Shown: positions 3,391-47,502 of the stretch, piece after piece
Position numbering within the stretch: the first letter of the stretch is position 1
Layout: every line of letters begins with the position of its first letter
Source: Macrostomum lignano
Lineage: Eukaryota
Direction of reading: 5' to 3'
Assembly: GCA_002269645.1 (NCBI GenBank)
Contig: NIVC01000007.1
Span: 44,129 to 108,128 of the forward strand
DNA: 64,000 bases
Position numbers and translations under genes: made by a program
Notes under the pieces: generated by a model
Told to the model about the DNA's origin: nothing
The model's database searches: none
The model's input: the letters and a program-made list of their open reading frames with translations, nothing else

Positions 3391-4151
3391 TTTAGTTAGT
3401 CAGTCAGTTACCAGACCTGTGAGTCATAAATCAAGCCACTAATGCCTCACCTGTGAGTCACCAGCAAAGCCTGATATCCCAGCCGACTCCGCAGGTGCAG
3501 CCGGCTGACTTTCCTGCGCCCATTCATCACCGAAGTAGTTCGCAGCACGCTGTACAACCGGCGGAGCAGGTCCAGGCCGACGGTGACAGTCGCTGGTTCA
3601 ACCGGTACAGCTGGCGGATTTCCAGTCTCCATGGCGCCCAGCAGAGCCACCAGGCCGCGGCCATCGAGGAACAGCGAGTCAGCGTAGGGCACCGCGAACT
3701 CCAGCATCAGCTGAGCGAACTTCGGCTCATCCGACGGCAGCGGAGGCAGCCGCAGGTGGGTCTTCACTCGGCCGCTGGCGGTGAGGAACTCCACCAGGCT
3801 GGACAGGCGATCGCGCAGCAGTCCGGCAGACTGCGGGTGGTCGTGGATGGCCTGAAGGCCCGCCAGCACGAGAAGGTCTGGCTGGAACTGCTCCATGCGG
3901 GACTGAAACGAGCGCAGGCTGGACAGCTGAGCGTTCCACTGACTCCGGCGGAGGGCGTACCAGCTGTGTGCGCCTGTGGCGGGGTCGGCTTGCTCCACTA
4001 GCAGCCTGAGGGGATGGCGATGGGGTTCCTGCTCTGGTGGAATTCTAATGCAGCCAGGCGAACAGACAGACAGACAGTCAGACAGACAGACAGACAGACA
4101 GTCAGTCAGACAGACAGACAGACAGTCAGACAGACAGACAGACAGACAGTC

Positions 4152-4184
<33 letters not shown>

Positions 4185-5072
4185 GTCACACAGACACACA
4201 GACAGTCAGACAGACAGACAGTCAGACAGACAGACACAGCAGCTCACCGGTACTCATCCACATCCACAGCCGAGTCTTTGGTCTCGGCCGCAGCGGCAGC
4301 AAGCGAGACTTCCTCGGCCAGCCGGTGCCGCATGCGCCCGGCCGCCCGGCCAGCCCCGAGCAGCACCTTAAAGCCGAAGCCGGCCAGTGAGTTGGCCAGG
4401 CGAACAGGGCATCCGCCCAGAGACACCCGGTGATGGTGCTGGCTGCCGCGGACGCCACCAGCGGCCGTCAAGTCAGCGACCAGAGCGGCAAACAGGCTGG
4501 CATTGTGAAGGTGCCGCTCAGAGGCCGGCTGACGGCCCGCCGAACGCTGTTGAAAATCCGCCACAATGTCGGAGGCAGTTTCAAGCCTGCGACGGCGGAT
4601 GTGTGGCGGTGTGGGGAAGTTCTTTTAGTTTGTCCAGTCCCCACATACTAGAATATTTAGATATGCTACTTGCAAAAATATGCGTTTATTTTAGTAGCAA
4701 AATTTGCGTTTTTAAAGATAAAAAAGAAACTTTTGAATTTTACCGATCAATCCGTTTGTTATTTGCATCCTTCGTTGCCATGGCAGCGCCTCCGTGAGCA
4801 GCCAGCAACGCCAAGAAGCGATCGGGACTGGCTCGAACGTCCACATTGGCACCGAGACCGACGGCAACCCTGGCTCGCCTGGAATGATCCGCCCGTCTGT
4901 TATCAGCGCTGCTGGCTACGCGAGATAGCGAACTGGCGGTTAAGGCTGCCGCCTTGGCCACGGCCTCCACTGATTGGCTGGCCAGCTGATGGCCCGTCAG
5001 CCAATAGGATGCGAGAAAGGCTAGCAAGGCCGCGGCCACTGCCCAGCATAGCAGGCGCTGCGGGTTGCCCAT
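2459..5072 (-). CDS. ADPGK: ADP-dependent glucokinase-like protein, 4 exons (5072-4744, 4586-4248, 4005-3451, 2930-2459), about 564 aa
   Basis: N-terminal hydrophobic anchor, then RVAVGLGANVDV, ASERHL, KVLLG, DEYRLLVE, FQPDLLVLAGL, SRLHLRS and AAGD, collinear with the ADPGK family. GT-AG junctions keep frame (329+339+555+472 = 1695 nt). Confidence 0.8.
2957..3410. repeat. (TTAG)n microsatellite in ADPGK intron 3
   Basis: Direct reading; occasional TCAG variants. Confidence 0.95.
4062..4237. repeat. (GACA)n microsatellite in ADPGK intron 2
   Basis: Direct reading. Confidence 0.95.
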
Positions 5073-6677: not shown

Positions 6678-6962
6678 TGGAGCTCAGGTGAGTCTTTGAG
6701 CTCAGGTGAGTCTTTGAGCTCAGGTGAGTCTTGAGTCTTCGAGCTCAGGTGAGTCGTTGAGCTCAGGTGAGTCTTTGAGCTCAGGTGAGCCTTGAGTCTT
6801 CGAGCTCAGGTGAGTCTTTGAGCTCAGGTGAGTCTTTGAGTTCAAGTGAGTCTTTGAGCTCAGGTGAGCCTTGAGTCTTCGAGCTCAGGTGAGTCGTTGA
6901 GCTCAGGTGAGTCGTTGAGCTCAGGTGAGTCTTTGAGCTCAGGTGAGTCTTTGAGCTCAGGT
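6678..6962. repeat. 18-bp minisatellite GAGCTCAGGTGAGTCTTT
   Basis: About 15 units by direct reading; produces the spurious LKDSPE ORFs. Confidence 0.95.
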
Positions 6963-15260: not shown

Positions 15261-17950
15261 GGGTGGCAACGAGACCACGTTCCCGATGCGCCCGCACCCT
15301 TTCGAGGGTGGCGAAGTGTCTCAATTTTCCCGGATGCTGCGAAGTAAGCCCAGGTCCTCGCCGACGCCCCCGAGGTCCTTGCTGGGGCGTCGGCGAGGAC
15401 CTTGGCTCTGATCACCTGCCAATACAGTTCTTGATCTGCGATTGCGCCCTGGAGGCCTGTTGCGCCGCCCTTTAAGAGAGGGAGATCACCCCATCAGCAG
15501 CCAACATAACTGACTAGAACGGAGCCCGCATCTCGCTATACAAGACCATTGCCACTGCAAAGCGAGAGCATTGGGAGAACACCTGCGAGTGGCTAAACAT
15601 CGGCTCGGACCTCTTCCGCCTCGCCCAGAAGCTCCGCGGCGACGCCGCCCCGCCCTGATCCAGTGCAACCATCCAAAACACCTCGAAACGCGGAGCCACT
15701 CACAAAGCTGTCACCGATTGTGAGAAAGCCGATCTAATTGTCGATATTTACGCCAGCGAGTCCCAGCTTGAGCCCGCCACCAGCGAGAGAAACATCCGTA
15801 CCGAAGCAAACAACTACCTGCGCAGCTGCCTCCGGGCACCCCTCAGCGATGCCGAGTGCGACTTCTCCCTGGCTGAGCTGTGCGCCGCCATCAGCCGGCT
15901 CAAAACCGGCAAGAGCGCTGGCCTGGACGGAATCGCCAATGAAATGATCAAACAGCTCCCGCCAGACACCGAAGCCTGTCTCCTCGACTTGATTAATTGT
16001 ACCTGGCGTGGCGACCCCATCTTTGCCAGGTGGTGCCGCGCTACGATCGTGCCGATCCCGAAGAAGGGTAAGGACCCAAGCAATCCAACTTTGTACCACC
16101 CAATCACGCTCACCAGCTGTATTGCAAAGACTGCAGAGTGGCTCATCCAGCAGCGTCTCAGTGTCTGGCTTGAACAGCACCATCGGCTTACCCCTGAACA
16201 AGCCGGCTTTCGCTCTGGCCGCAGCACGGAAGAGGTGCTAGCCCACGTCTGCCAATCGATTTTTGACAGCCTTGAAGCCAGCCCTGCCCTCCACTTGGCC
16301 CTTGTGCTGCTGAACTTTAAACGAGTATATAACTGGGTCTGGCTCCAGGCTCTTTGCATCAAACTATGCAATGCAGGAGTCCCAGCGCGCTTCATGCTGT
16401 GGATCTTCAGATTCCTCTATGACAGGCGTGCCGCCATCTGCTGGAACTCAGCCATAGCAGCAAGTGCATTTTCTCGGAGGGACTACCACAGGGAAGCGTC
16501 ATCGCCCCACTTCTCTGGCTGCTCTACATTAATGACCTACTTGCTGCGGTGCTGCGCGCCAGCCCCAGCTGCGGCATCAATCTCTACGTGGATGACAGCA
16601 GCTTCACAGCCATTCATCAACAGCTCCGGGGGTGCACTGCCATTTTCCAGCCCGCCATTGCCACTGTGGTGGAATGGTGCAAGATCTGGAAAGTACTTCT
16701 CAGCTAGAAGTGCAAGTACGGTACTTTCATCCTCAGCCCAGCTGAGTGCAACAGCAAACTCCACCTTCTGCTTACTATCAACGGCCACGAGCTTGCCTTC
16801 AATCTTTATCCTAGGCTGCTCGGCATGACTCTCGATTGCCAGCTCAACTTTAGTCAGCATGGGCAAGAGGTCTGCCATTGCATGGCTCAACACCACAGAG
16901 CCTTGGCGCCTTGCAAGCCATCTACCTTGCCACTATCCAAGCCTGCGCAGACTATGGCAGTGCCATATGGCTAATAGGCGCGGCACCAAACACTAGGCAC
17001 ACCATCGAACAGCAACAAACTATCTGCGCGCATTTTATCACTATCACTGGCTGCTGCAGTTCCACCCCCAACCACCTGACACTCCAACTGGCGAACCTGC
17101 CACCTGTGGGCAACATTGCCATCAAGCGAGCTGCCTCCCTGTTTAAATGCATCTCCAGGCTACTCCCAGACTGCCCAGCTTTTGCCACCAGCACACGGCG
17201 GACATGACCGCGACTCAAAAACTGGAGCTTTGACCCGTCCCCAGCGTGGGAAGCGAGGTCCCTAATGACCGCGGCAACCTCAACTGCTCCCATAAGTTCC
17301 AAGGGTGCTGCATTGTGCTGCCACTGAGCTGTCCATCTATGCCACGCTGCAGCACCTTGGATGGGAAAACATGCCTAGACCTACCCCCTAGAGACTGCAA
17401 CGGCGGCCCTAAAACTTTTGACCTCACTGAAATGCGCATCCACTGCTTTGCCCCTTAGTGGCTAGGGCCAAAGCTGCAACCGTCAGTCCTACCAACTACG
17501 ACGCCATTGCCTGGACCAATAAGTCAACCGCCAGCGGCACTAAGAATAACAGCAGTGCTGCTGTCATCTGCATTGGCAATGCCACTACTATCATCTGCAA
17601 GCTGGCTGGCGCACTCTGCAGCAGCTTTTAGGCTGAGCTAGTTAATATCCATGCTATGCTGGAATACCTCCTTGCAAACCAACCCACGCTTTCCGCACAG
17701 TCGCCATTGCCATGGACAGCTTGAGTGCCCTGATGGCCCATGAATAAGCTCCCTTGGGCAAGCCACTGCCACTAGAGAAGTCTGTTGGCAATTCCTAGCC
17801 AACAGCAGCACTGCCGTCACTTTCATTTGGGTGCCAGGCCATGCAAGAATTGACAGCAACGACACAATAGACACTGCTACTGCCGAGGCTGCTATCCTGC
17901 CACAAGCCTTCGCTGCCATCAGCCTCTAGACAGTATGTACCACAATCTAC
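15261..17950 (+). mobile_element. Decayed non-LTR retrotransposon with RNase H (I/Ingi-like); pseudogenised
   Basis: APE C-terminus GEDLGSDHLPI; RT motifs KSAGLDGIANEMIK, IVPIPKKGKDP, PITLTSCIAK and QAGFRSGRST. RNase H remnants SSF*AEL, AMDSLSAL and FIWVPGHA lie at about 17500-17880. Many stops and frameshifts; the 3' end is approximate. Confidence 0.85.
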
Positions 17951-20499
17951 CAAGATTGTTGCACTCTCAATACTCAGGTCCTAGTCCCTCCATTTTGCCC
18001 AACCAAGCCAGGCTACAGCAGGGAGGATTTCATTGCCACGAACCTGTTCCATGCTAGTGTTAGTACCCTCTGCGCTATCATCTGCAGATAATTATACTTA
18101 ATTATAGTTAGTCTTGCCATTTAACCAAAAACTGCAATATACCATGATACCACCTGCTTTGACTCTAGCCATAATATGACACCAGAAAATTCCGAAATTG
18201 CAATGGATGTTAGATAACTTCTGTCCACTTATTCCAATAGGGCTAACCAAAATTGGCTAAAAATAAAGATAACAAAAATTGCAAACAATCATACAAGTAG
18301 GTCTAATAAAATATATATACATATAAGGGGAACTAGTATACAATACTACTATGCTATATTATAGGGCCTAGGTATAGTTCAAGTCTAAGACTAAGCCTAT
18401 GATAGCATGGGTGCTAGTCACTTTATCAATTGGCATTTTATCAGATGGTTGACAAAGTGACTATTTGGCAGGGGTAACAGTATTTGCAATTGACAGTGTC
18501 CTCATTTTTAATTTATAGTTTTTTTGGTGCCAAATGTTTATAGAGAATTGAGCTTTATATGAGATATTTTATTTGTGATTTAAAAAAATTAATTTTCACA
18601 GATTAATTAGTTAATAGTTTATTATTAAATTTTATCATTCTTTTTAAACAACCTTTTTACTTTGTTATAATTCAATGTTGAATTTTGAATTTTAATTTAA
18701 TTAGGCCAAATTTAGACAATTTAAACATATATCTTTATTAGGGTATATATTTTGAAAAGAATATCGGCTTATCAATATAGTATAAGGCCTATTGCACTTC
18801 AAAATTAATTAACCTACTTTACCTGCTTCATTCATATTTAAAGAGAGTTTAATAGAACAATTCTTTCTTAGTATAGATATAGCCTTAACATATATTATAC
18901 AAAATATTGCATTGTATATAGACCTCTATAGGTGGTATCAATTGATATATGATTATGTATATAACCATAGGCCCAGTCAACAAAGTGATAGTGATTACCA
19001 TTTTAAGTGTCACAATTGGAAATTGACAAAGTGACAATGTTTAAAGGGCAATTGATTTGCTAGTTGATAAAATGACCTAAGGCCTAAGGGAAATAGCTTC
19101 TCAGTTGACAAAATGCTAGTTGACAATTTGACTAGGATTCAATGACCCTAGGCCTATATATACAAAAAGAAATTTAATTTTAATTAGGGCCTAGGTCTAG
19201 CCCTAGGATAGGCCTCTATAAACTAAAGAAGATATAATATTCAACATATGCCCTAATTAATTATCTTTGTCATTTAGACAATGTCAATGTCATTAACATA
19301 ACAACCATGTCAACCAGACATTGAAGTCTATAAAAGCAAGCCCAAAAATTAAAAAAAAATTAAATTAGGCCTATGTGATTTTAGTTTTTAATTTGACTTG
19401 AATTTTTGCCTAAGCCTTATGCCCTTAGGCCTACACCTAGGCCTACTATACTTAAAGTTGAAGCCTTGAAGGGGCCTAGCCTTATTTTTAGGTCATCAAA
19501 TTTTTTAAATAATTGCCATTGGTTATATTATTCAATAAATATAGGCTCTAGGCCCTAGTTAATATATTCATTAGGGGCCTAACATTATTTTTACTTTAGT
19601 TCCTTGTTCTTTCTTTTTCTTGAACTTCTAATCTCAATCTAGAGTCTAGACTCTCTAGTATGAAAATAAAATGAAGTTAGGCCTAGCTTTCAGACAAACT
19701 AGGTACAAAATTGTTTTTTTTTTCTGTGATCATTTGGCCTATTTCTGTAAAAGCATCTGCTTGGACTCTACTTACACTTACACCCAAAATTTTAATTATT
19801 TTGGGACTTTACAAGACTTTCCTGCCCATGCGGCCGTCCCTTAACTAAATATAGTACTTTTTTAATGTGCCTTAGAGCATTGACTATGCCTAAGACTAAG
19901 AGGCTAAGAACTTATTAACTGGACTGCACCGAGCGATAATATGAAGGAATGCAAATGCTGCAACAAAAACACATCCGTCACGTCGCCTATTCGACGTTGC
20001 ACGATCATTAAGCAAAGAATTAAATCAAATTAAATTAAATTTAGTGCCCCAAAGCAAAACACGAATACGCGATGTTGGCGAAAGCGAAAGCAGTAACGAG
20101 GCCTCTTTATTTATATTTTAATGATTAAAAGAATAAGGATAAAAGAAGAAGAAAAAAAAGAACTGCGCGAAAACACTGCCAACTCAGCAGCGCGGCTGGA
20201 GTAAAATACCCCCCCCGCCGGCGGAGGGGTGGGCGCCCACCTAAACAACACAGAACGTACACACGCGGCGGGGGGGGGCGCACCACAGACGCAGCGTGCT
20301 TGGGCACTAAAGCCGGTTTGCTCAAGGCAAGCCTAGCGCAAACCGCAGCCTTAGTGCCCCAAAGCAAAACACGAATACGCGATGTTGGCGAAAGCGAAAG
20401 CAGTAACGAGGCCTCCAAAGCCAAAGCAACAACGGGAAAGCGCGCGAAAGAAAAAAAAAACATAGAAGGAAACGGAACATCGAAAAGCTGATGCCAACG

Positions 20500-21558
20500 T
20501 CAAACGAGGGATCCCACACCTCTAGCAAACACGACGGAAGCTGCCAAGCCCTGCTGCGACTGCGGGAGATACCGCTGCACTGAGTCGCTCTTCCAGTCAC
20601 CGATCCGCATGATGTCGGGCACCGGCACACCCAACACCGAGGCCCAGGTCGCGCCGCCACGGCGGAGGCTGTGGGCTGAGAAGTGCTCACGCCTGAAGCC
20701 CGCAGCCCCTAGCTTGTCCGCTAGGAAGCGATCGAGCTGCCTGCCCGTCAGCAGCCGCTGGTTGCCTCCGGCGTCGCGATAAGTGAACAGAGGCGCATCA
20801 GCCGATTGCAGATTATTGAATCTTGCGTGCTGCTCGATTGCTAACACCGGGCACAGCGACGTCCGCCTCACTAGCCTTGGTAGAAGCACCTGGTGCACCC
20901 GCTCTTTGAACTGGAGAGTCTTCCCTTGCTCCAGGCGCAAGATCAGACCTCGCGGGTGTCGAAAGATGTCAGCGCAGCGCACACGTGCCGGACCTTTTCC
21001 CGAAGTCGGCAGCACGCTGGATTTTCGGAGCATGCCCCACCAACAGCAGATGGTGACTGCCCAGCATGCCAGCTGAAGCCCATCAGAACGACTGACTCGC
21101 TGATGAATCTCCGACAACATGAGCGGCGATACTGGTCGTTTTCTCGACACCCGAAGTCCCAGCTCTCGCTTGGCGCCTCGCAGGAGGAGAGTCGTGGCGG
21201 CATGCTTCGTCAGGTCTGGTGCAGAGTTGATGCGAAACCAAACGGACAGCGAGCTGGCGACAGAAGCAACGCTGCCGTACGCACGCAAACGCGTCCCGAC
21301 TAGGCTGGCCAGGTAGTCGAGCAGGCTGTTCAGCGGACAGGATACAGGACTGCAGCGGGTCTGCTTGCAGTAAGCTAGCCACTCACGGATGTGCCTTGCC
21401 ACCGCCTGCCTTGACCGTGGTGCATAAGAGACGCCTAGCAGCGACGCGGCCCGGCGGCTGAGAGAGTCTGGCGCAGCTGGACGGCCTGAAAATGAAGAAA
21501 GTGGGCAGAGGCAGGGCAGAAAGCATGTCGATGCATTGATTGCAAAGCAAACGGGCAC
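20500..21558 (-). CDS. Tyrosine recombinase of the Ngaro element
   Basis: Catalytic set intact: MLRKS (R), SAHSLRRGGAT (H-x2-R), GDW and VQRY (Y). The listed start is GTG; the first ATG lies deep inside the domain. Confidence 0.92.
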   Translation of the reverse strand: MPVCFAINASTCFLPCLCPLSSFSGRPAAPDSLSRRAASLLGVSYAPRSRQAVARHIREWLAYCKQTRCSPVSCPLNSLLDYLASLVGTRLRAYGSVASVASSLSVWFRINSAPDLTKHAATTLLLRGAKRELGLRVSRKRPVSPLMLSEIHQRVSRSDGLQLACWAVTICCWWGMLRKSSVLPTSGKGPARVRCADIFRHPRGLILRLEQGKTLQFKERVHQVLLPRLVRRTSLCPVLAIEQHARFNNLQSADAPLFTYRDAGGNQRLLTGRQLDRFLADKLGAAGFRREHFSAHSLRRGGATWASVLGVPVPDIMRIGDWKSDSVQRYLPQSQQGLAASVVFARGVGSLV

Positions 21559-23093
21559 AAGTTGCCATAGCAGCGAAATAAAAAATTAATCAACTGACTG
21601 CGCTCGTGCAACCGAGACGCTGCATCGGCGAGAATTTGAAACTCTCCCGGCACATGAAAGGCTCGCACACTCAAACCATGCCGTAAGGACATCAACGCAA
21701 TCGTTTGCAGTAGCCTCTGCACGACAGGACACCTCGAAGTGCCATTATTGATAATATGACAGGCCGCCATGTTGTCACAATAAACGCTAACTTTACAGCC
21801 TTTCAGCTCTTCCCTCCAGCGCAGGATTGACAGCAAAGGAGCCACCGCCTCTTTGTAGTTGATTGGCAGATCAGCGAACACTCCGGCCCCATCCTGGCTC
21901 CAATTGATGTAGCACCAGTCCCAACTGCCATCTGACCTTCGAAGCACCGCTGCCCCGCCTCTTCCACATGCATCGGACTCGATTGCCACATGGTTCTTGA
22001 AAACAGGCCAAAGCTCCACCCACCGGGCCGACTCCAGCGCTACAATCCACCAGCTGAATTGGTCACAGAGCTGTAAGCTGACTTTAATTCTCTCGTCAGG
22101 CCGCATAGCGTTGCACACTTCGATCAGATCACGCAGAAAAGTTTTTCCTTTGCGAATCACCTGTGCTGCCCAGCCAAGCTTGCCGATCAAGCGTTGCAAA
22201 GCCCGCTTGCTGATCCTGGTTTTGCTCCTTTCAGTTGCTAACAACTCAGCGAGGTTCCTCGCCTTCTCCTCGGGCAACCTCTTGATGCCGGCCACTGTAT
22301 CGAACTCGACACCAAGGAAGGTCATGCGCTGAGTTGGTGTCTGACACTTTGCCCAGTTTACAGTGAAGCCCAGCCGCGTCAACAGGCCTGTCAGCTCGTC
22401 GTAAAACCGCTGGCATTCGTCACGCGAGCCCGCGAAGGCGAAATCGTCCAGGTAGGACTCGGTGCCCACAAAGCCTCTGCGCACCATCATTAAACGCACA
22501 GCATTGCTAAGATGGTGAAAACAGGTAACAGAAGCTGCAGCGCCGAACGGCAAACGGGTGTCATACATGTAGGTGGCTGCCTTGGACTCGCCGAAGCGGA
22601 ACTTGATCCCTGTCCGGCTGAAATCATCGGGGTGAACACCACAGGCGCGGTACGCTTCGCTGAGATCCACCTTAGTCATAAAGCAGCCTCTAGAAAGCTT
22701 CCTCGCAAAGTTGTCGGCACACGTGAAGCGCAGCCTCTCCTGGCTGACCCATCTGGAGTTCACAGAGTTATTCACGGGCCGACTGCAGTCGTGAATCAGG
22801 CGCACACGGCCACCAACCTTGGGCAAGGCTCCGAGAGCACTGACCACTTGCGGACGCCAGCCGGTCGGGCACTCGCGATACCTGCCACACCCGAGCTCCT
22901 TCTTAATCTGCTTTTCCACAGCCTCGAAATGAACATTGACAGAATGGTAGTTGTTAACATCAATTGACTTGCAGTCAGAAACAGTTTTGTTAGTTATACG
23001 AAAACCATATGCAACACCATCGAGAATAAACTTCTTCCGATCCATAGGCAAATCAATACACAACAGCTCCTTCTCCCACTCCACGAACCTCAA
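21435..23093 (-). CDS. Reverse transcriptase / RNase H of the Ngaro element
   Basis: RLIHDCS, KVDLSEAYR, RLPFG, YLDDF and FLGVEFD; RNase H motifs ESDAC, NYKEA, YCDN and ADAASR. The listed start is TTG. Confidence 0.95.
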   Translation of the reverse strand: MRFVEWEKELLCIDLPMDRKKFILDGVAYGFRITNKTVSDCKSIDVNNYHSVNVHFEAVEKQIKKELGCGRYRECPTGWRPQVVSALGALPKVGGRVRLIHDCSRPVNNSVNSRWVSQERLRFTCADNFARKLSRGCFMTKVDLSEAYRACGVHPDDFSRTGIKFRFGESKAATYMYDTRLPFGAAASVTCFHHLSNAVRLMMVRRGFVGTESYLDDFAFAGSRDECQRFYDELTGLLTRLGFTVNWAKCQTPTQRMTFLGVEFDTVAGIKRLPEEKARNLAELLATERSKTRISKRALQRLIGKLGWAAQVIRKGKTFLRDLIEVCNAMRPDERIKVSLQLCDQFSWWIVALESARWVELWPVFKNHVAIESDACGRGGAAVLRRSDGSWDWCYINWSQDGAGVFADLPINYKEAVAPLLSILRWREELKGCKVSVYCDNMAACHIINNGTSRCPVVQRLLQTIALMSLRHGLSVRAFHVPGEFQILADAASRLHERSQLINFLFRCYGNLCPFALQSMHRHAFCPASAHFLHFQAVQLRQTLSAAGPRRC

Positions 23094-23138
23094 ATCTGTA
23101 GATAAAATGGGGACGTTAAAATCACTACGGGCACTCAG

Positions 23139-24179
23139 TCAGTGCGAGGACCTGGCCGTCTCGATACCCACGCCATCCCGGTGGGCAGCCGCTTCTGAGT
23201 GGCCTAGACCGCACCTCCGGCATTGATGAGCAAACTTGCAGTTTCTTCTGCTGCAACCGGCTTCCTTATTGAAGTCAAAGCACACAGGCTGCTGGCTCCG
23301 CTTCGACGGTCTCTCTGAGGCAGTCGGACCCCTCTGTGGTGCCATCAGGTAGGCGGCCACCAGACCCATGTCGGAGGCTCTGGCTTCCCAAGAGGTAGTA
23401 GCTGTCTGGCTTATTCTGCACTCATCGTCGAATCTCATGACGCGGGTCTTCTCGAAACCAAGGTCAAAAAGCTCTCCTATCCGAATATTAAAGCTCAGGT
23501 AGTCTCGGAGCTCAGAAACATCAGGACATTCTCCTTCACCGCTCTTAACTAGAGCTCCATCATCCAGCATCTTCAGCATTATGCGCGCATTGCCAGCAAT
23601 CCAGTCGCCAAAGGTCAGAGATTCTAACGCTGCCTCCTTCACTTTGTAGACAACTTTACCTGTCCGATCAACAGACTGGATGATACCCGCTTCCTGCTGC
23701 TTGCGTTTACAGATGAATTCGGGGATGCGGTAGGTACCATGCGGGATCGCTGGTCTAGCTGACTCACTCCCTGATATCACGTGACCAAACAACTCACCAT
23801 GGTTAGTTGAGGGAGCCCGGTGCCGCTGCAATAGGTTAACCTCGGCCTGCAGCTCGGCTTCTTCCTTGCGCAGTTTCAGCAGCCGTATACGCTGCTCGAC
23901 TTCCCGCACCTCGTCGTCCAGGCCGCCAGCCGCTCCAGACTCTGACGCCGCCGTCGCAGCTTCGCCGTCCGCCGCAGCCGCCAGCAAATCTTGAATGTTC
24001 TTCGAGCGAGTCGTCTCCGGGGTCAGTGAAGGTCTGCGATCATCGCCGTCCTGCAGTTCTGTAACGCTGTCGATGTGTGCAGACAGCCTCTCCAATAGCT
24101 CCATTTTGTTTCCGTGGGTTGGCAGGCCTAGGCCTTGCAACCTCTCGCGCAGTGACTTGACAGTGTCAGTGCTAGCCAT
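23139..24179 (-). CDS. Gag-like ORF1 of the Ngaro element (N-terminal SAP-like motif, coiled coil, C-terminal CCCH/CCHH zinc finger)
   Basis: ATG at 24179. TVKSLRERLQGLGLPTHGNKMELLERL is SAP-like; EVREVEQRIRLLKLRKEEAELQAEV is a coiled coil; CFDFNKEAGCSRRNCKFAHQCRRCGLGH is the zinc finger. Confidence 0.85.
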   Translation of the reverse strand: MASTDTVKSLRERLQGLGLPTHGNKMELLERLSAHIDSVTELQDGDDRRPSLTPETTRSKNIQDLLAAAADGEAATAASESGAAGGLDDEVREVEQRIRLLKLRKEEAELQAEVNLLQRHRAPSTNHGELFGHVISGSESARPAIPHGTYRIPEFICKRKQQEAGIIQSVDRTGKVVYKVKEAALESLTFGDWIAGNARIMLKMLDDGALVKSGEGECPDVSELRDYLSFNIRIGELFDLGFEKTRVMRFDDECRISQTATTSWEARASDMGLVAAYLMAPQRGPTASERPSKRSQQPVCFDFNKEAGCSRRNCKFAHQCRRCGLGHSEAAAHRDGVGIETARSSH

Positions 24180-24547
24180 GATTCAGCGATTGGCATTAGA
24201 GTTCAAAAAAAGAAAAAGAACTGCGCGAAAACACTGCCAACTCAGCAGCGCGGCTGGAGTAAAATACCCCCCCGCCGGCGGAGGGGTGGGCGCCCACCTA
24301 AACAACACAGAACGTACACACGCGGCGGGGGGGGGCGCACCACAGACGCAGCGTGCTTGGGCACTAAAGCCGGTTTGCTCAAGGCAAGCCTAGCGCAAAC
24401 CGCAGCCACTCGTAGTAGTAGAGCCAACGTGAAGTTATCGTTGTCATACTTGAAATGGGGATGCAGGAAATACATCCGAAAATCGAACAACAATCAAGAA
24501 CAACTTGCTTACAAACCATAGAAATATTTCCAGAGCTGAGATGAACG

Positions 24548-27204
24548 GTATCCGCCAATGTATCCGCCAATGTATCCGCCAATGTAGCCAACGGTATCCG
24601 CCCGATTGCCTCCAAGGTAGACGCCATTCAGCAGTGGCCGGCGCCCAAGGACGCGAACGCTTTACGGCGATTCCTCGGGGTCATCGGCTTTTATCGGCGG
24701 TTCATCCCGCACTTCGCTGACATCGCCGCACCGCTGCAAGATCTCGTTACATCGGCACGACGTTCACCGCGAGCCTACACCTGGGGACAAGTCCAAGAAG
24801 AGGCGTTCAGGCGACTCAAGGAGAGCCTGGCTGAGCGACTGCTGCTTCAGCACCCGGACCCGAACTGCGAGTCCTACAGCCTGGTCACGGACGCTTCATA
24901 CACCAGCATCGGCGCCGCGCTTCATCAAGCGTCCAGCGAGACCTCGACACCGATTGGCCTATTCAGCAAGAAGTTGACGGCTGCGCAGCAGAAGTACTCA
25001 GCGTTCGACCGAGAGCTTCTCGCCGTCTATCTGGCAGTGCTGCATTTCCGGAGCTTGATTGAGGGCCGCAACGTGACGGTCTTCACGGACCACAAGCCCC
25101 TGGTTCAAGCGTTCCACAGCAGCAGAGACGGCACATCGGACAGGAACCAGCGATACCTCAGCGTCATCACGGAGTACGTCACGGACGTCAGCTACATCCG
25201 AGGCGCCGACAACGTCGTCGCGGATGCTCTTTCGAGACTCGACGCCGACAACAGGGCGAGCATCGGACATGTCGACGCCGACCAGCCACCACCAGCGCCG
25301 ATCGATATCCCAGCCATCGCAGACCAGCAGCAACAGGAAGACATGCAACCATCCGACAACTGCCGCGTCTTCCCGGTGGACGGCAACAGGTCGCTGCTCT
25401 GCGAGACGTCGACGAGCTACCCGCGACCGGTGATTCCAAAGTCAATGCAACAGTCGCTGATAAGGCACTTCCATGACTTGGGTCACTTCGGCCTCCGCAA
25501 GACAGCCCGCCTCATCACATCGCGCTACTACTGGCCCAGCATGCGCTTCGACATCAAGAGCTACTGCCGAACCTGTGAGACTTGTCAACGCACCAAGATC
25601 AGCCGGCACACCATCTCCGGCAGCACAGCGTTTGACCTGCCTTCTAAGCGACTGGAGACGGTCCATATCGACATCGTCGGCCCCTTGCCTGTCCCGGAGC
25701 GCAAGCACGACGTCTCCTGCGGCCTGACCCCAAGGTATCTGCTTACTATGATCGACCGGGGCACTGGTTGGTTCGAGGCTGCTCCGCTTGAGTCCATCAC
25801 AGCTTCCAGCGTCGCCGCCGCCTTCCTGGCTACTTGGATTTCCCGATACGGGGTGCCGCTCTACATCGTTACAGATCGGGGAGCCCAATTCGAGGCGGAC
25901 CTCTTCAAGTACCTCGCCAGCAGGGTCGGTTTCTTTCGCCTGAGGACAACGGCGTATCACCCGCAGACAAACGGGAAGGTTGAGCGGGCGCACCGGACGC
26001 TGAAGAACATCCTGAAGGCTCACGGACCTTCTTGGCTGGACAGTCTGCCGCTTGCTTTGCTCGCCATGCACATCGCTCCCGACGAGAACGGCGTCAGCCC
26101 TTTTACGCGCCTCACGGGTGAGCATCCCATGGTTCCACGAGTCCTGGCGACGGAGGACATTGAACCGCAGACACTCCAGCTCCGGATGGACAGCATCATC
26201 GACGACGAGCAACGTCCAGGCACGACAGCACCAGTGAGGCAGTACATCCCGGCTGACCTGTGGAGCGCCAAGAAAGTCTGGCTGAGGGTGGACCGCGTGC
26301 GCAAGCCCCTTGAAGCGCCCTATCAAGGCCCATTCCGAGTCATCCAAAGGACGGCAAAGTTTTTCGTCATCGAGACACGTCCAGGTCATCAGGAAACCGT
26401 CTCTATCGACCGTCTAAAGCCGCTACGAGGACCCCAAGGAGCCACCGGCGCACGGCCAGTTGAGCAGCACCGACCGGAGAACCTGCCATCGTCACGACAG
26501 CCATCTCATGCAACGCCGCCATCGGCAGCCGAGTCCAGTTTGACACAGCCGTCAGAATCCGAGCTGCCATCAGCGTCACCAACTCCGGACCCACCCGCTG
26601 CACCCGCCGCGACGGAGCCGGAAAAGGTGACTAGAAGCGGTCGCCGCGTGAGATTCGCCAGAGACAATGATTTTCATTACTATTGACATCGCATTTTTCC
26701 AATTTTTTCTCACTTTTCTTTCATCTCGTTTCCATTGCACCGTACATGTACTGTTTTCATTGTTTCGTTCTTAGTATCTGGGGACTCCGTCTTCCGTGGG
26801 GGGAACTATTGTAGCGTAAAGCATCAATTTTAGAAAGTACGTATCGCGCAATATTTATTTTTAGAAATTAGAATCTTCGAGAAATTACTTTTTGTAGTGC
26901 AAGTTAAAGTTCATTCTAGAAATTTCCTTTAGTTTAATCAAACGTTAGTTTTACTTCTAAATATTGAGTATAAAATTTATTGTTGTCATATTTATTAATG
27001 CATTTGTACAGCAGTGCTACGTAATAGCATTTAGAATATTTAATTTTGTTTTAACTAACGAAACTTCTAGAAATTTCCGGTTATACTCAGTTCAGTACTA
27101 TAAATAAACGTAACCTATGTACTTCAACTCTTTAAGTGATTCTTTTCATTCAGCAAACACAGAACCACCGCCTTGGCTCTTTATCTTCATCAACTATCGC
27201 TACA
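24548..27204 (+). mobile_element. 5'-truncated Ty3/Gypsy LTR retrotransposon (end of RT, RNase H, integrase, PPT, 3' LTR)
   Basis: Open frame from about 24548: GIRPIASKVDAI, LRRFLGVIGFYRRFIP, LVTDAS, YSAFDRELLA, FTDHKPL. Integrase HHCC finger, VHIDIVGP, IVTDRGAQF, YHPQTNGKVER and GPF motif; stop at 26686. No gag, protease or 5' LTR in the window. Confidence 0.92.
26810..27204 (+). repeat. 3' LTR of the Gypsy element (395 bp)
   Basis: Follows the polypurine tract GGGGGGAAC; begins TGTAGCG and ends CGCTACA (perfect 7-bp inverted termini). Confidence 0.85.
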
Positions 27205-46895: not shown

Positions 46896-47502
46896 AAAAT
46901 CACTCTCAGTAGCCCAGATTCAGCTGTACTGCAAGGTACTGAGTTCGATTTTTATTTTAGCGCAAGCAGGTTTTGTTTTAATAAAAGGAAATAAAGTTAT
47001 TATTATTTAAATAATCGTTTTGGCTGGCATCGTGGAGTTTGCTTAACACATTCCTCTAACATTCCTATTAGTATGTCTAATTATTTTATGCAGACACTAT
47101 TTATGGCACATGTAATCTGAAGTTTAAAAGCTCATTAACTATTAACTTTAAATCTTTTGAAATTATCTTACAAAGCTAACGGTTTTATTTTGCTGTAATT
47201 GGCTTCATGACACAATAGGTTGCTTATCTGCTCACAGCTGAGTCACAAATTTGTGATCAAGCGGAACCCCGCTTGTCTGCTAAGAATATTTAACAATTAA
47301 TAAAATAAATATAAAAGTACATGCGCATATGTGTGCGTGTGTTGCAGAGCTGCTTGACGTTCGAAGCACTTCCTGATAAAGTACGCTCGTAAAAAATCAA
47401 TGTACTGTTTTATACTTGAGTTTGCTACATTTTTTATCTGTCTGCTTAACGTGTCTGCTTAAAGTAGGCTAACAGTATTTGTTTAGTATTTTGTTTGTAG
47501 TA

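What the first reader, a model, noticed from the sequence alone, without database searches (positions are those of the whole stretch)
20500..23801. Ngaro retrotransposon appears wired for alternative splicing: one gag donor, two in-frame acceptors for RT/RH and for the recombinase
Seen in sequence (minus strand): neither enzyme ORF has an ATG ahead of its conserved domain. The YR ORF begins at a very strong 3' splice site, CTTTCTGCCCTGCCTCTGCCCACTTTCTTCATTTTCAG|GC (exon from 21485). The RT ORF begins at TTTTAAC-GTCCCCATTTTATCTACAG|AT (exon from 23095). Both are phase 1. gag contains three phase-1 donors: CATG|GTGAGT (intron from 23797), GGA|GTGAGT (23767) and CAG|GTAAAG (23659). GTGAGT is the commonest donor in the host genes of this window. 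Joining 24179-23798 to 23095-21435 gives 2043 nt (680 aa), and to 21485-20500 gives 1368 nt (455 aa); both are open. Inference: unspliced RNA makes Gag, while two spliced RNAs make RT/RH and YR that each carry the first 127 aa of Gag (SAP-like motif plus coiled coil) but lack the zinc finger. This could tether both enzymes to the Gag particle or to DNA. I do not know of this scheme being described for Ngaro elements, but I could not search the literature.
Basis: partly seen in the sequence, partly recalled or inferred. Interest (0 to 1): 0.85.

Follow-up and report, generated by a model that had tools for sequence, protein, structure and literature searches.

The report
Ngaro retrotransposon: spliced recombinase, readthrough RT
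This is an intact Ngaro retrotransposon that probably makes its recombinase from a spliced RNA, as a fusion to the first 127 residues of Gag, a scheme conserved across animal phyla and not found in the literature searched.

Summary
The element (minus strand, 24407-20041) is an intact Ngaro: A1, gag, RT/RNase H, tyrosine recombinase (YR), B1, A2, B2.

**YR splice: supported, though no RNA was examined.** The acceptor (pyrimidine tract + CAG|G, exon from 21485) is the best-scoring AG of 299 in the element. It recurs at the same spot in 14 of 14 related elements from several families. The donor CATG|GTGAGT (intron from 23797) is the best GT upstream and is kept, in phase 1, in relatives, although the Gag sequence around it is not conserved. 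RefSeq gene models in a limpet and two amphioxus genomes join Gag N-terminus to YR at exactly these sites.

**RT splice: not supported.** The AG at 23097-23096 is missing in the three closest relatives. All six same-frame relatives have UGA-C. All three -1-frame relatives carry A AAA AAY. Gag-RT is therefore most likely made by translational recoding.

The scheme resembles a simple retrovirus, with the recombinase in place of env. I found no description of it.

The parts
24207..24407 (-). A1, the 5' split direct repeat
   Evidence: 98.5% identical over 202 nt to A2 at 20149-20350.
23139..24179 (-). gag ORF (346 aa plus TGA): SAP motif at aa 6-36, coiled coil around aa 86-120, variable linker, Gag core, and a C-terminal CCHC-like zinc knuckle
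   Evidence: ORF list and translation. Pfam SAP, E = 5e-6. Alignment with the Gags of relatives.
23792..23800 (-). 5' splice site ATG|GTGAGT. Exon 1 ends at 23798 and the intron starts at 23797. Phase 1, after Gag codon 127.
   Evidence: - Best-scoring of 162 GTs between the gag ATG and the YR acceptor.
- GTGAG is kept at phase 1 in L001, L002 and L003, inside a linker whose protein sequence is not conserved. The codon is GGT three times and TGT once.
23139..23141 (-). The single in-frame TGA between gag and RT/RH (context CAC TGA CTG); proposed programmed readthrough site
   Evidence: - Same frame, and only one stop in 915 codons.
- UGA-C occurs in 6 of 6 same-frame elements and in 0 of 6 elements with another frame arrangement.
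23094..23138 (-). 15-codon linker between the stop and the RT core (LSARSDFNVPILSTD). It is conserved as peptide and partly as nucleotides (ATTTTAAY, RTTTTATC).
   Evidence: - Codon alignment with L001 and L002 shows synonymous changes, and no AG in the relatives.
- The site ranks 2 of 299 AGs in this copy only.
21435..23138 (-). RT/RNase H ORF (567 codons plus TAG), in frame with gag
   Evidence: - Pfam RVT_1, 43.3 bits. RT_RNaseH, 21.3 bits, which is below the cutoff.
- 52-61% identical to P0001, P0002 and P0003.
21579..21585 (-). T TTT TTA heptamer in the RT frame, at the point where the YR frame opens; a candidate -1 frameshift site specific to this copy (rival route to YR)
   Evidence: - Heptamer scan.
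- No stable downstream structure, z = +1.2.
- Absent in L002, L003 and all other families. In L003 the YR frame is closed at this position.
21486..21527 (-). 3' splice site: pyrimidine tract plus CAG (AG at 21487-21486); exon 2 starts at 21485, phase 1 in the YR frame
   Evidence: - Rank 1 of 299 AGs, with 32 of 40 pyrimidines upstream.
- Same signal at the same position in 14 of 14 related elements: rank 1 in 9, and rank 7 or better in all.
20500..21485 (-). Exon 2: tyrosine recombinase (327 codons plus TGA), with no ATG before the catalytic fold
   Evidence: - Aligns with Cre residues 29-306, including HxxR and W...Y.
- Pfam Phage_integrase, 19.4 bits, which is below the cutoff.
- The join with exon 1 gives a 455-aa open frame.
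20351..20415 (-). B1 repeat
   Evidence: 100% identical to B2.
20149..20350 (-). A2 repeat
   Evidence: 98.5% identical to A1.
20041..20105 (-). B2 repeat, the 3' end of the element
   Evidence: 100% identical to B1.

Best explanation
The region is a young, intact Ngaro tyrosine-recombinase retrotransposon whose expression is organised like that of a simple retrovirus.

1. The unspliced RNA is the template for reverse transcription. It is also the mRNA for Gag and, by occasional readthrough of the single UGA-C stop at 23141-23139, for a Gag-RT/RNase H fusion.
2. One intron of 2312 nt (23797-21486) is removed from part of the transcripts. This joins Gag codon 127 plus one base to the recombinase frame.
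3. The spliced RNA encodes a 455-aa protein: the SAP motif and coiled coil of Gag, followed by a complete Cre-like recombinase that has no start codon of its own.

**Shown directly:** the ORFs, frames, signals and their conservation.

**Inferred:** that splicing and readthrough actually occur. It is also inferred that the shared Gag N-terminus gives the recombinase a DNA-binding or oligomerisation module, or tethers it to Gag assemblies.
For: **YR splice**
- The acceptor ranks 1 of 299 AGs here. The homologous site ranks 1 in 9 of 14 related elements and 7 or better in all 14.
- In L016 and L017 the acceptor lies downstream of the RT stop, so the pyrimidine tract is not a by-product of RT coding.
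- 10 of 14 YR frames have no ATG before the domain.
- No conserved slippery heptamer exists in the RT/YR overlaps.
- Donor: the top-scoring GT is a phase-1 site in the N-terminal part of gag in 7 of 11 elements. L012, L013 and L014 share a phase-1 GTRAR after Gag residue 14-15.
- In the close family, GTGAG is kept in a linker that does not align as protein.
- All predicted joins are open.
- Three RefSeq models join Gag-N to YR across the rest of gag plus RT at these very sites, all phase 1:
  - XP_050388701.2 (Patella vulgata)
  - XP_035659582.1 (Branchiostoma floridae)
  - XP_078682739.1 and three further identical 503-aa XP models, each on a different large contig (B. floridae x B. belcheri)
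- My naive 'best phase-1 donor' rule reproduces the 640-aa and 503-aa products exactly.

**Readthrough**
- gag and RT share one frame with one stop.
- The linker peptide H*L..(D/N)FN..(I/V)LS(T/S)DL is conserved with synonymous changes.
- UGA-C occurs in 6 of 6 same-frame elements against 0 of 6 others. A AAA AAY occurs in 3 of 3 elements with RT in the -1 frame.
Against: - No RNA data were available. The RefSeq models are Gnomon predictions whose supporting evidence I could not inspect, and a gene finder would favour the same consensus sites.
- No spliced fusion protein of the close family was found in the protein collections, although those searches were crippled by the word index.
- The pyrimidine tract in this copy also encodes a moderately conserved RT-frame tail (HAFCPASAHFLHFQ), so part of its conservation could be protein-level.
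- This copy has a T TTT TTA heptamer that could give an RT-YR frameshift fusion.
- No conserved readthrough-stimulating RNA structure was found downstream of the UGA.
- In L003 the homologous donor scores poorly (CCT|GTGAGT). In L013 and L014 the donor is ambiguous by score alone.
Confidence: 0.6

Rival explanations
1. One reading: one gag donor (23797) and two alternative acceptors. These would give Gag(1-127)::RT/RH (exon from 23095) and Gag(1-127)::YR (exon from 21485), both lacking the rest of Gag.
For: - In this copy the RT acceptor looks good: TTTTAAC branch-like motif, pyrimidine run, CAG, rank 2 of 299.
- The join is open.
- The motifs ATTTTAAY and RTTTTATC are conserved at nucleotide level in L001 and L002.
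Against: - The AG is absent in L001, L002 and L003.
- The phase match is automatic, because gag and RT share a frame.
- The codons upstream of the 'acceptor' are conserved as protein, with synonymous changes.
- UGA-C and A AAA AAY signals explain Gag-RT in all families.
- No RT homologue in the database carries a Gag-N fusion.
Confidence: 0.05
2. No splicing at all. YR would be made by a -1 ribosomal frameshift from the RT frame, as a (Gag-)RT/RH-YR polyprotein. In this copy the shift would occur at T TTT TTA (21585-21579).
For: - YR is in the -1 frame relative to RT in all 12 elements where the RT and YR frames overlap.
- This copy has an HIV-type heptamer in the correct frame, exactly where the YR frame opens.
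- L001 has T TTT TTG at the same place.
- The family does use -1 frameshifting at gag/RT in some members.
Against: - The heptamer is absent in L002, L003, L004 and all other families.
- In L003, L006, L011, L012 and L015 the YR frame opens only 4-31 nt before the CAG, and no slippery site is present there.
- In L016 and L017 the RT stops before the acceptor, so frameshifting is impossible.
- There is no downstream structure, z = +1.2.
- It does not explain the top-ranked acceptor or the in-phase gag donors.
Confidence: 0.15
3. Gag-RT is made by removing a short intron that contains the stop codon. The donor would be CGG AG|GTGCGG (intron from 23214) and the acceptor CCCGTAG|T (exon from 23124): 90 nt, in frame. 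This would replace readthrough.
For: - The Macrostomum lignano protein A0A1I8G0Z6 (P0106) lacks exactly the stop-containing segment (...HQCR|S|STELSSDL...).
- The GTGCGG donor is present in the window, L001 and L003.
- A phase-2 AG exists in the linker of all four close relatives. In L003 it would also repair the gag/RT frame difference.
Against: - The GT is forced by the conserved zinc-knuckle residues R-C-G.
- The acceptor has no pyrimidine tract, and its position is not conserved.
- L003 has a canonical A AAA AAC 6 nt before its gag stop.
- UGA-C is found in 6 of 6 same-frame elements.
- P0106 is a gene-model protein with no DNA available. Gene predictors commonly 'splice out' in-frame stops.
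Confidence: 0.07
4. The splice-like signals are coincidental or non-functional by-products of coding constraints. YR would be translated by some other route, such as non-AUG initiation or reinitiation.
For: - The tract is coding in the RT frame in most elements.
- The RT-frame motif (HMS...FL..Q) is partly conserved.
- Some elements have an ATG near the junction: L004, L007, L012 and L017.
Against: - Rank-1 acceptors in 9 of 14 elements, among 150-350 AGs each.
- The acceptor persists where it is non-coding (L016, L017).
- Donors are always phase 1, across at least 5 families.
- Every predicted join is open.
Confidence: 0.08

Closest known systems
Ngaro elements as described (Goodwin & Poulter 2004; summarised in PMC9210276)
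   Same: - gag, RT/RNase H and YR in that order.
- Split direct repeats A1...B1A2B2.
- No methyltransferase domain.
- ORFs that 'overlap'.
   Different: Published descriptions available to me only state that the ORFs overlap. They give no expression mechanism. Here the overlaps resolve into recoding (gag/RT) and a conserved intron (Gag-N::YR).
Avian leukosis/Rous sarcoma virus env mRNA (from my own knowledge)
   Same: The splice donor lies inside gag, downstream of the gag AUG. The distal gene has no AUG of its own and is translated as a fusion to the first Gag codons.
   Different: - ALV donates only 6 codons that end up in a signal peptide. Here 127 residues with folded modules (SAP, coiled coil) are donated; the L012-L014 family donates about 15.
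- The distal gene is the recombinase, not an envelope.
Murine leukaemia virus expression plan (from my own knowledge)
   Same: - Gag from unspliced RNA.
- Gag-Pol by readthrough of one in-frame stop.
- A third gene from a singly spliced subgenomic RNA.
   Different: - MLV uses UAG plus a pseudoknot. Here the stop is UGA-C, and no conserved structure was found.
- In MLV the integrase is part of Pol, whereas here the integrating enzyme is the spliced product.
Foamy virus Pol (from my own knowledge; review PMC7828637 listed)
   Same: A replication enzyme is translated from its own spliced mRNA rather than as part of a Gag-Pol polyprotein.
   Different: Foamy Pol is not fused to Gag sequence. Here only the recombinase, not RT, is on the spliced RNA.
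Spliced subgenomic RNAs of Ty1/copia elements (Drosophila copia, BARE, Arabidopsis EVD; PMC3735527, PMC5580714)
   Same: Splicing of a retrotransposon transcript sets the ratio of products.
   Different: There splicing removes pol to over-produce Gag. Here it removes most of gag plus RT to produce the recombinase.

Membership tests
Ngaro (tyrosine-recombinase retrotransposons, order DIRS) | Reverse transcriptase plus RNase H | tested here: met
   - Pfam RVT_1 at 43.3 bits, above the 29.6 cutoff.
- RT_RNaseH at 21.3 bits, below the 24.8 cutoff.
- 102 homologues, all RVT_1.
Ngaro (tyrosine-recombinase retrotransposons, order DIRS) | Tyrosine recombinase instead of a DDE integrase | tested here: met
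   - Aligns with Cre residues 29-306 at E = 0.0024. HSLRRGGA aligns with HSARVGAA, and GDWKSDSVQRYL with GGWTNVNIVMNYI.
- Pfam Phage_integrase scores only 19.4 bits, below the 27.1 cutoff.
- 4693 relatives found by phmmer.
Ngaro (tyrosine-recombinase retrotransposons, order DIRS) | Split direct repeats A1-[ORFs]-B1-A2-B2 | tested here: met
   BLAST of the element against the window gives A1/A2 of 202 nt at 98.5% and B1/B2 of 65 nt at 100%, in the expected order.
Ngaro (tyrosine-recombinase retrotransposons, order DIRS) | No methyltransferase domain and no inverted terminal repeats (which distinguishes it from DIRS1-like elements) | tested here: inconclusive
   Pfam finds no methyltransferase domain in any ORF. 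I did not run an explicit inverted-repeat search.
Ngaro (tyrosine-recombinase retrotransposons, order DIRS) | RT falls in the Ngaro clade in a phylogeny | not tested
   No tree was built. The nearest homologues have the same gag-RT-YR layout.
Programmed stop-codon readthrough for Gag-Pol (gammaretrovirus type) | gag and pol in one frame, separated by a single stop | tested here: met
   One stop in 915 codons. The same arrangement occurs in L001, L002, L005, L006 and L017.
Programmed stop-codon readthrough for Gag-Pol (gammaretrovirus type) | Leaky stop context | tested here: met
   UGA followed by C in 6 of 6 same-frame elements, including UGA CUAG in L001. None of the 6 other elements has it.
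Programmed stop-codon readthrough for Gag-Pol (gammaretrovirus type) | Downstream stimulatory RNA structure | tested here: inconclusive
   The RNAalifold consensus of three sequences is weak, -6.3 kcal/mol. The conserved ATTTTAAY and RTTTTATC motifs remain unexplained.
Programmed stop-codon readthrough for Gag-Pol (gammaretrovirus type) | A readthrough product is observed | not testable with these tools
   Needs a reporter assay, ribosome profiling or proteomics.
Retrovirus-type subgenomic splicing with a gag-encoded leader (ALV env type) | Consensus 5' splice site downstream of the gag AUG, in phase with the distal ORF | tested here: met
   ATG|GTGAGT, rank 1 of 162, phase 1. It is conserved in relatives, and the joins are open.
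Retrovirus-type subgenomic splicing with a gag-encoded leader (ALV env type) | Consensus 3' splice site immediately upstream of a distal ORF that lacks its own AUG | tested here: met
   Rank 1 of 299, present in 14 of 14 elements, and no ATG in 10 of 14 YR frames.
Retrovirus-type subgenomic splicing with a gag-encoded leader (ALV env type) | The spliced RNA is observed | not testable with these tools
   Only indirect evidence: RefSeq Gnomon models in Patella and Branchiostoma use the junctions.
-1 programmed ribosomal frameshift for RT-YR | X XXY YYZ heptamer in the upstream frame, inside the overlap | tested here: met
   T TTT TTA at 21585-21579 in this copy.
-1 programmed ribosomal frameshift for RT-YR | Downstream stimulatory structure, and conservation of the site | tested here: not met
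   z = +1.2 against shuffles. The heptamer is absent in 12 of 14 elements, and the site is closed by stops in L003.

The most novel reading that the evidence does not exclude
Metazoan Ngaro and related YR retrotransposons as a group express their recombinase only from a singly spliced subgenomic RNA, as a fusion to the N-terminal module of Gag. That module is SAP plus coiled coil here. In other families it is a SAM-like helical domain, a CxxC zinc motif, or a 15-residue basic peptide. This would be the first retrovirus-like subgenomic mRNA in the DIRS order. It would also make the Gag N-terminus a shared targeting or DNA-binding arm of the recombinase.
Probability: 0.55. Interest if true: 0.75.

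Novelty: new variant of a known kind. Interest (0 to 1): 0.65.

Why it matters
How DIRS and Ngaro elements translate their overlapping ORFs, which lack start codons, is not addressed in any paper I could find. The one description I read says only that the ORFs frequently overlap.

- **A concrete, testable expression map.** Recoding gives Gag-RT and one conserved intron gives Gag-N::YR. This explains why YR ORFs lack start codons.
- **A functional prediction.** The recombinase carries Gag's nucleic-acid-binding or oligomerisation module, which may couple recombination to the Gag/cDNA complex.
- **An evolutionary point.** The retroviral logic of a third gene on a spliced RNA that uses the gag AUG would have arisen independently in a tyrosine-recombinase lineage.
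- **Consequences for annotation.** Gene finders will call Gag-N::YR 'genes' inside these elements. Spliced RNAs could also seed deletion derivatives of about 2.05 kb that keep both sets of repeats.

Tried and rejected
**Searches that gave nothing useful**
- The hypothetical Gag127::YR fusion against the 5.8-billion-protein collection: only two YR-only hits.
- P0106 as query: returned only itself. The word index appears to fail for this family, so absence of a close-family fusion is uninformative.
- First metagenome scan with the RT protein: nothing. An earlier attempt had a frame error.
- Second scan with an RT alignment: 6 loci, of which L005, L006 and L007 were useful.
- Rfam on the whole window: no hits.
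- Five literature searches and four papers read, of five look-ups. I found no description of native splicing, readthrough or frameshifting in Ngaro or DIRS. Goodwin & Poulter 2004 is not held.
- Short N-terminal extensions on other YR hits turned out to be ORF calls on metagenome contigs, so they are uninformative.

**Ideas rejected**
- A conserved readthrough stimulator: the consensus fold is weak.
- A structure downstream of T TTT TTA: none.
- Spliced-leader trans-splicing at the YR acceptor, considered because the nearest proteins are from the flatworm Macrostomum. I rejected it as the general mechanism. The phase-1 acceptor would not be in frame with an AUG at the 3' end of a spliced leader, as recalled from other flatworms (not checked here). 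In-phase cis donors are conserved in non-flatworm hosts.

Full report
**What is there**

On the minus strand, 24407-20041 is a complete Ngaro-type retrotransposon.
- A1 (24407-24207) and A2 (20350-20149) are 98.5% identical. B1 (20415-20351) and B2 (20105-20041) are identical. The order is A1-ORFs-B1-A2-B2.
- The three ORFs are intact.
  - gag runs 24179-23139 and has a SAP motif (Pfam E = 5e-6).
  - RT/RNase H runs 23138-21435 (RVT_1, 43 bits).
  - The third ORF is a recombinase (21558/21485-20500). It aligns with Cre over residues 29-306, including the HxxR and W...Y catalytic motifs.
- It is the only copy in the window.
- It sits inside a Ty3/gypsy-like pol.

**Checking the observation**

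- The donor is CATG|GTGAGT, with the intron starting at 23797.
- The acceptors are ...TTTTCAG|GC (exon from 21485) and ...TCTACAG|AT (exon from 23095).
- The joins are 2043 and 1368 nt, and both are open.

Any in-frame deletion between them is automatically 'in phase'.

The RT ORF also has an ATG at 23045-23043, although this lies downstream of the conserved W-x-x-E-L motif. The YR ORF truly has no ATG ahead of its fold.

**Relatives**

- An RT search found 102 homologues.
- The closest are three metagenome or sequencing-run contigs, L001, L002 and L003, at 61, 58 and 52% identity, plus L004.
- The nearest named proteins are from the flatworm Macrostomum lignano.
- More distant complete elements were L005-L007, L011-L014 and three elements in annotated genomes. 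These three are L015 (Patella vulgata), L016 (Branchiostoma floridae) and L017 (B. floridae x B. belcheri).

**The RT acceptor fails**

- At the homologous codons the window reads TCT ACA GAT. L001 reads TCG ACT GAC, L002 reads TCG TCG GAC and L003 reads TCG TCT GAC. None of the three has an AG.
- The peptide upstream of the proposed acceptor, H*L..(D/N)FN..(I/V)LS(T/S)DL, is conserved with synonymous differences. This stretch is therefore probably translated.
- L001 and L002 also have gag, one TGA, then RT in the same frame.

Across all twelve elements with a gag/RT junction:

| gag-to-RT arrangement | Elements | Signal |
|---|---|---|
| Same frame, one stop | window, L001, L002, L005, L006, L017 | UGA followed by C in 6 of 6 (UGA CUAG in L001) |
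| RT in -1 frame | L003, L011, L015 | A AAA AAY in the gag frame, inside the overlap, in 3 of 3 |
| RT in +1 frame | L013, L014, L016 | Diverse stops (UAA G, UAG U, UGA A) |

None of the six elements in the last two rows has UGA-C.

Gag-RT/RH is therefore best explained by translational recoding, which in this copy means UGA readthrough. I found no convincing conserved stimulatory structure. The motifs ATTTTAAY and RTTTTATC downstream of the stop are conserved at nucleotide level and remain unexplained.

**The YR acceptor holds**

- In all 14 elements a pyrimidine-rich run ending in CAG sits exactly where YR-frame conservation begins.
- With a simple acceptor score it is the best of 150-350 AGs in 9 elements. 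It is never worse than 7th.
- It is always phase 1 in the YR frame.
- In L016 and L017 it lies downstream of the RT stop, so it is not a side effect of RT coding.
- Ten of 14 YR frames have no ATG before the domain.
- Several YR frames open only 4-31 nt before the CAG, and no slippery heptamer is conserved.

**The gag donor holds**

- In the window, L001, L002 and L003 a GTGAG sits at phase 1, between the coiled coil and the Gag core. The proteins do not align in this linker. The split codon is GGT three times and TGT once.
- The best-scoring GT between the gag ATG and the YR acceptor is a phase-1 site in the first part of gag in 7 of 11 elements: the window, L001, L002, L006, L011, L016 and L017.
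- The L012-L014 family shares a phase-1 GTRAR after Gag residue 14-15.
- Every predicted join is open.

**Independent annotation**

A full HMMER scan with the YR returned proteins with N-terminal extensions. Three are RefSeq models. Mapping them to their loci shows two exons, the Gag N-terminus and the YR, with the rest of gag plus RT as the intron.

| Locus | Donor | Acceptor |
|---|---|---|
| Patella (L015) | GCAA\|GTATGT, after Gag residue 124 | TTCTAAACAG\|AT |
| B. floridae (L016) | CAG\|GTAAGA, after residue 312 | TTTATTTCAG\|CC |
| Hybrid Branchiostoma (L017) | AAG\|GTAAGC, after residue 173 | CTCCCACAG\|CC |

- All of these are phase 1.
- The N-terminal modules differ between families: SAP plus coiled coil, a SAM-like helical domain, or a CxxC motif. 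The architecture is the same.
- These are Gnomon models. I could not see their RNA support, so they corroborate the splice rather than prove it.

**Rivals for YR in this copy**

- T TTT TTA lies in the RT frame at 21585-21579, just where the YR frame opens. It could give an RT-YR frameshift product.
- It has no downstream structure.
- It is not conserved. The equivalent site is closed by stops in L003.

**A second rival for Gag-RT**

- This rival is a 90-nt stop-containing intron (23214-23125). It is suggested by the Macrostomum protein A0A1I8G0Z6, which lacks that segment.
- Its donor GT is forced by the zinc-knuckle codons.
- Its acceptor is weak and not positionally conserved.
- L003 has a textbook slippery site instead.
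- That same protein jumps from RT residues ...SALG to RLPATP... exactly at the YR acceptor position.

**Mechanism proposed**

1. Unspliced RNA gives Gag and, by UGA readthrough, Gag-RT/RH.
2. A singly spliced RNA (intron 23797-21486, 2312 nt) gives a 455-aa Gag(1-127)::YR protein.
3. The signals and their conservation are shown. Splicing, readthrough and the role of the shared N-terminus are inferred.

**Comparison and novelty**

The plan parallels simple retroviruses. MLV has readthrough Gag-Pol plus one spliced RNA. The ALV env mRNA starts with gag codons. Foamy virus Pol is made from a spliced RNA. Here the recombinase is the spliced gene.

The papers I could search describe Ngaro and DIRS ORFs only as 'overlapping'. 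They report no native splicing or recoding. I rate it a new variant of a known kind.

Noticed in passing
window 21579-21585 (minus strand): An HIV-type slippery heptamer, T TTT TTA, lies in the RT frame exactly where the YR frame opens. L001 has T TTT TTG at the same place. No downstream structure was found.
   Followed up: yes
window 23100-23122 (minus strand); L001 1551-1575; L002 1125-1149: Downstream of the gag UGA, the motifs ATTTTAAY and RTTTTATC are identical at nucleotide level in three elements that are only about 60% identical in RT protein. This includes the rare Leu codon TTA. It may be a readthrough-stimulating element.
   Followed up: partly
UniProt A0A1I8G0Z6 (P0106) and A0A1I8JH72 (P0105), Macrostomum lignano: These are the closest named relatives of the window's Gag and YR, so the host is probably a flatworm-like metazoan. 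P0106 is a Gag-RT(N-terminal 100 aa)-YR chimera. Its second junction falls exactly at the YR acceptor, and its first removes the stop-containing segment.
   Followed up: partly
window 24974-26686 (+) and 15944-16825 (+): Both are Ty3/gypsy-type pol fragments: RNase H plus integrase H2C2 plus rve, and RVT_1. The Ngaro element appears to be nested in, or next to, this older LTR element.
   Followed up: partly
window 24548-24586: A perfect 12-nt tandem repeat (GTATCCGCCAAT, 3.2 copies) lies about 140 nt outside the A1 end of the element.
   Followed up: no
window 6680-6962: A minisatellite whose 18-nt unit, GAGCTCAGGTGAGTCTTT, carries a consensus 5' splice site (CAG|GTGAGT) about 15 times.
   Followed up: no
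window 47503-50196, 50940-52432, 59342-60547 and many others: The window is very rich in tandem arrays. Examples are a 20-nt unit in 135 copies, ATAG in 374 copies and a 17-nt unit in 71 copies. The long 'ORFs' at 47479-50322 and 50873-52462 are artefacts of these repeats and have no Pfam hits.
   Followed up: partly
window 3450-4199 (minus strand): An open frame with an ADP-dependent glucokinase/phosphofructokinase domain (Pfam ADP_PFK_GK, E = 2e-14). It is probably a host exon, flanked by TAGT and ACAG microsatellites.
   Followed up: no
L013 about 1470-1490; L014 about 1150-1170: Elements with RT in the +1 frame share CCA CGT TTT CGN in the gag/RT overlap. This is a possible +1 frameshift site, with UUU slipping to UUC before an Arg codon.
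   Followed up: no
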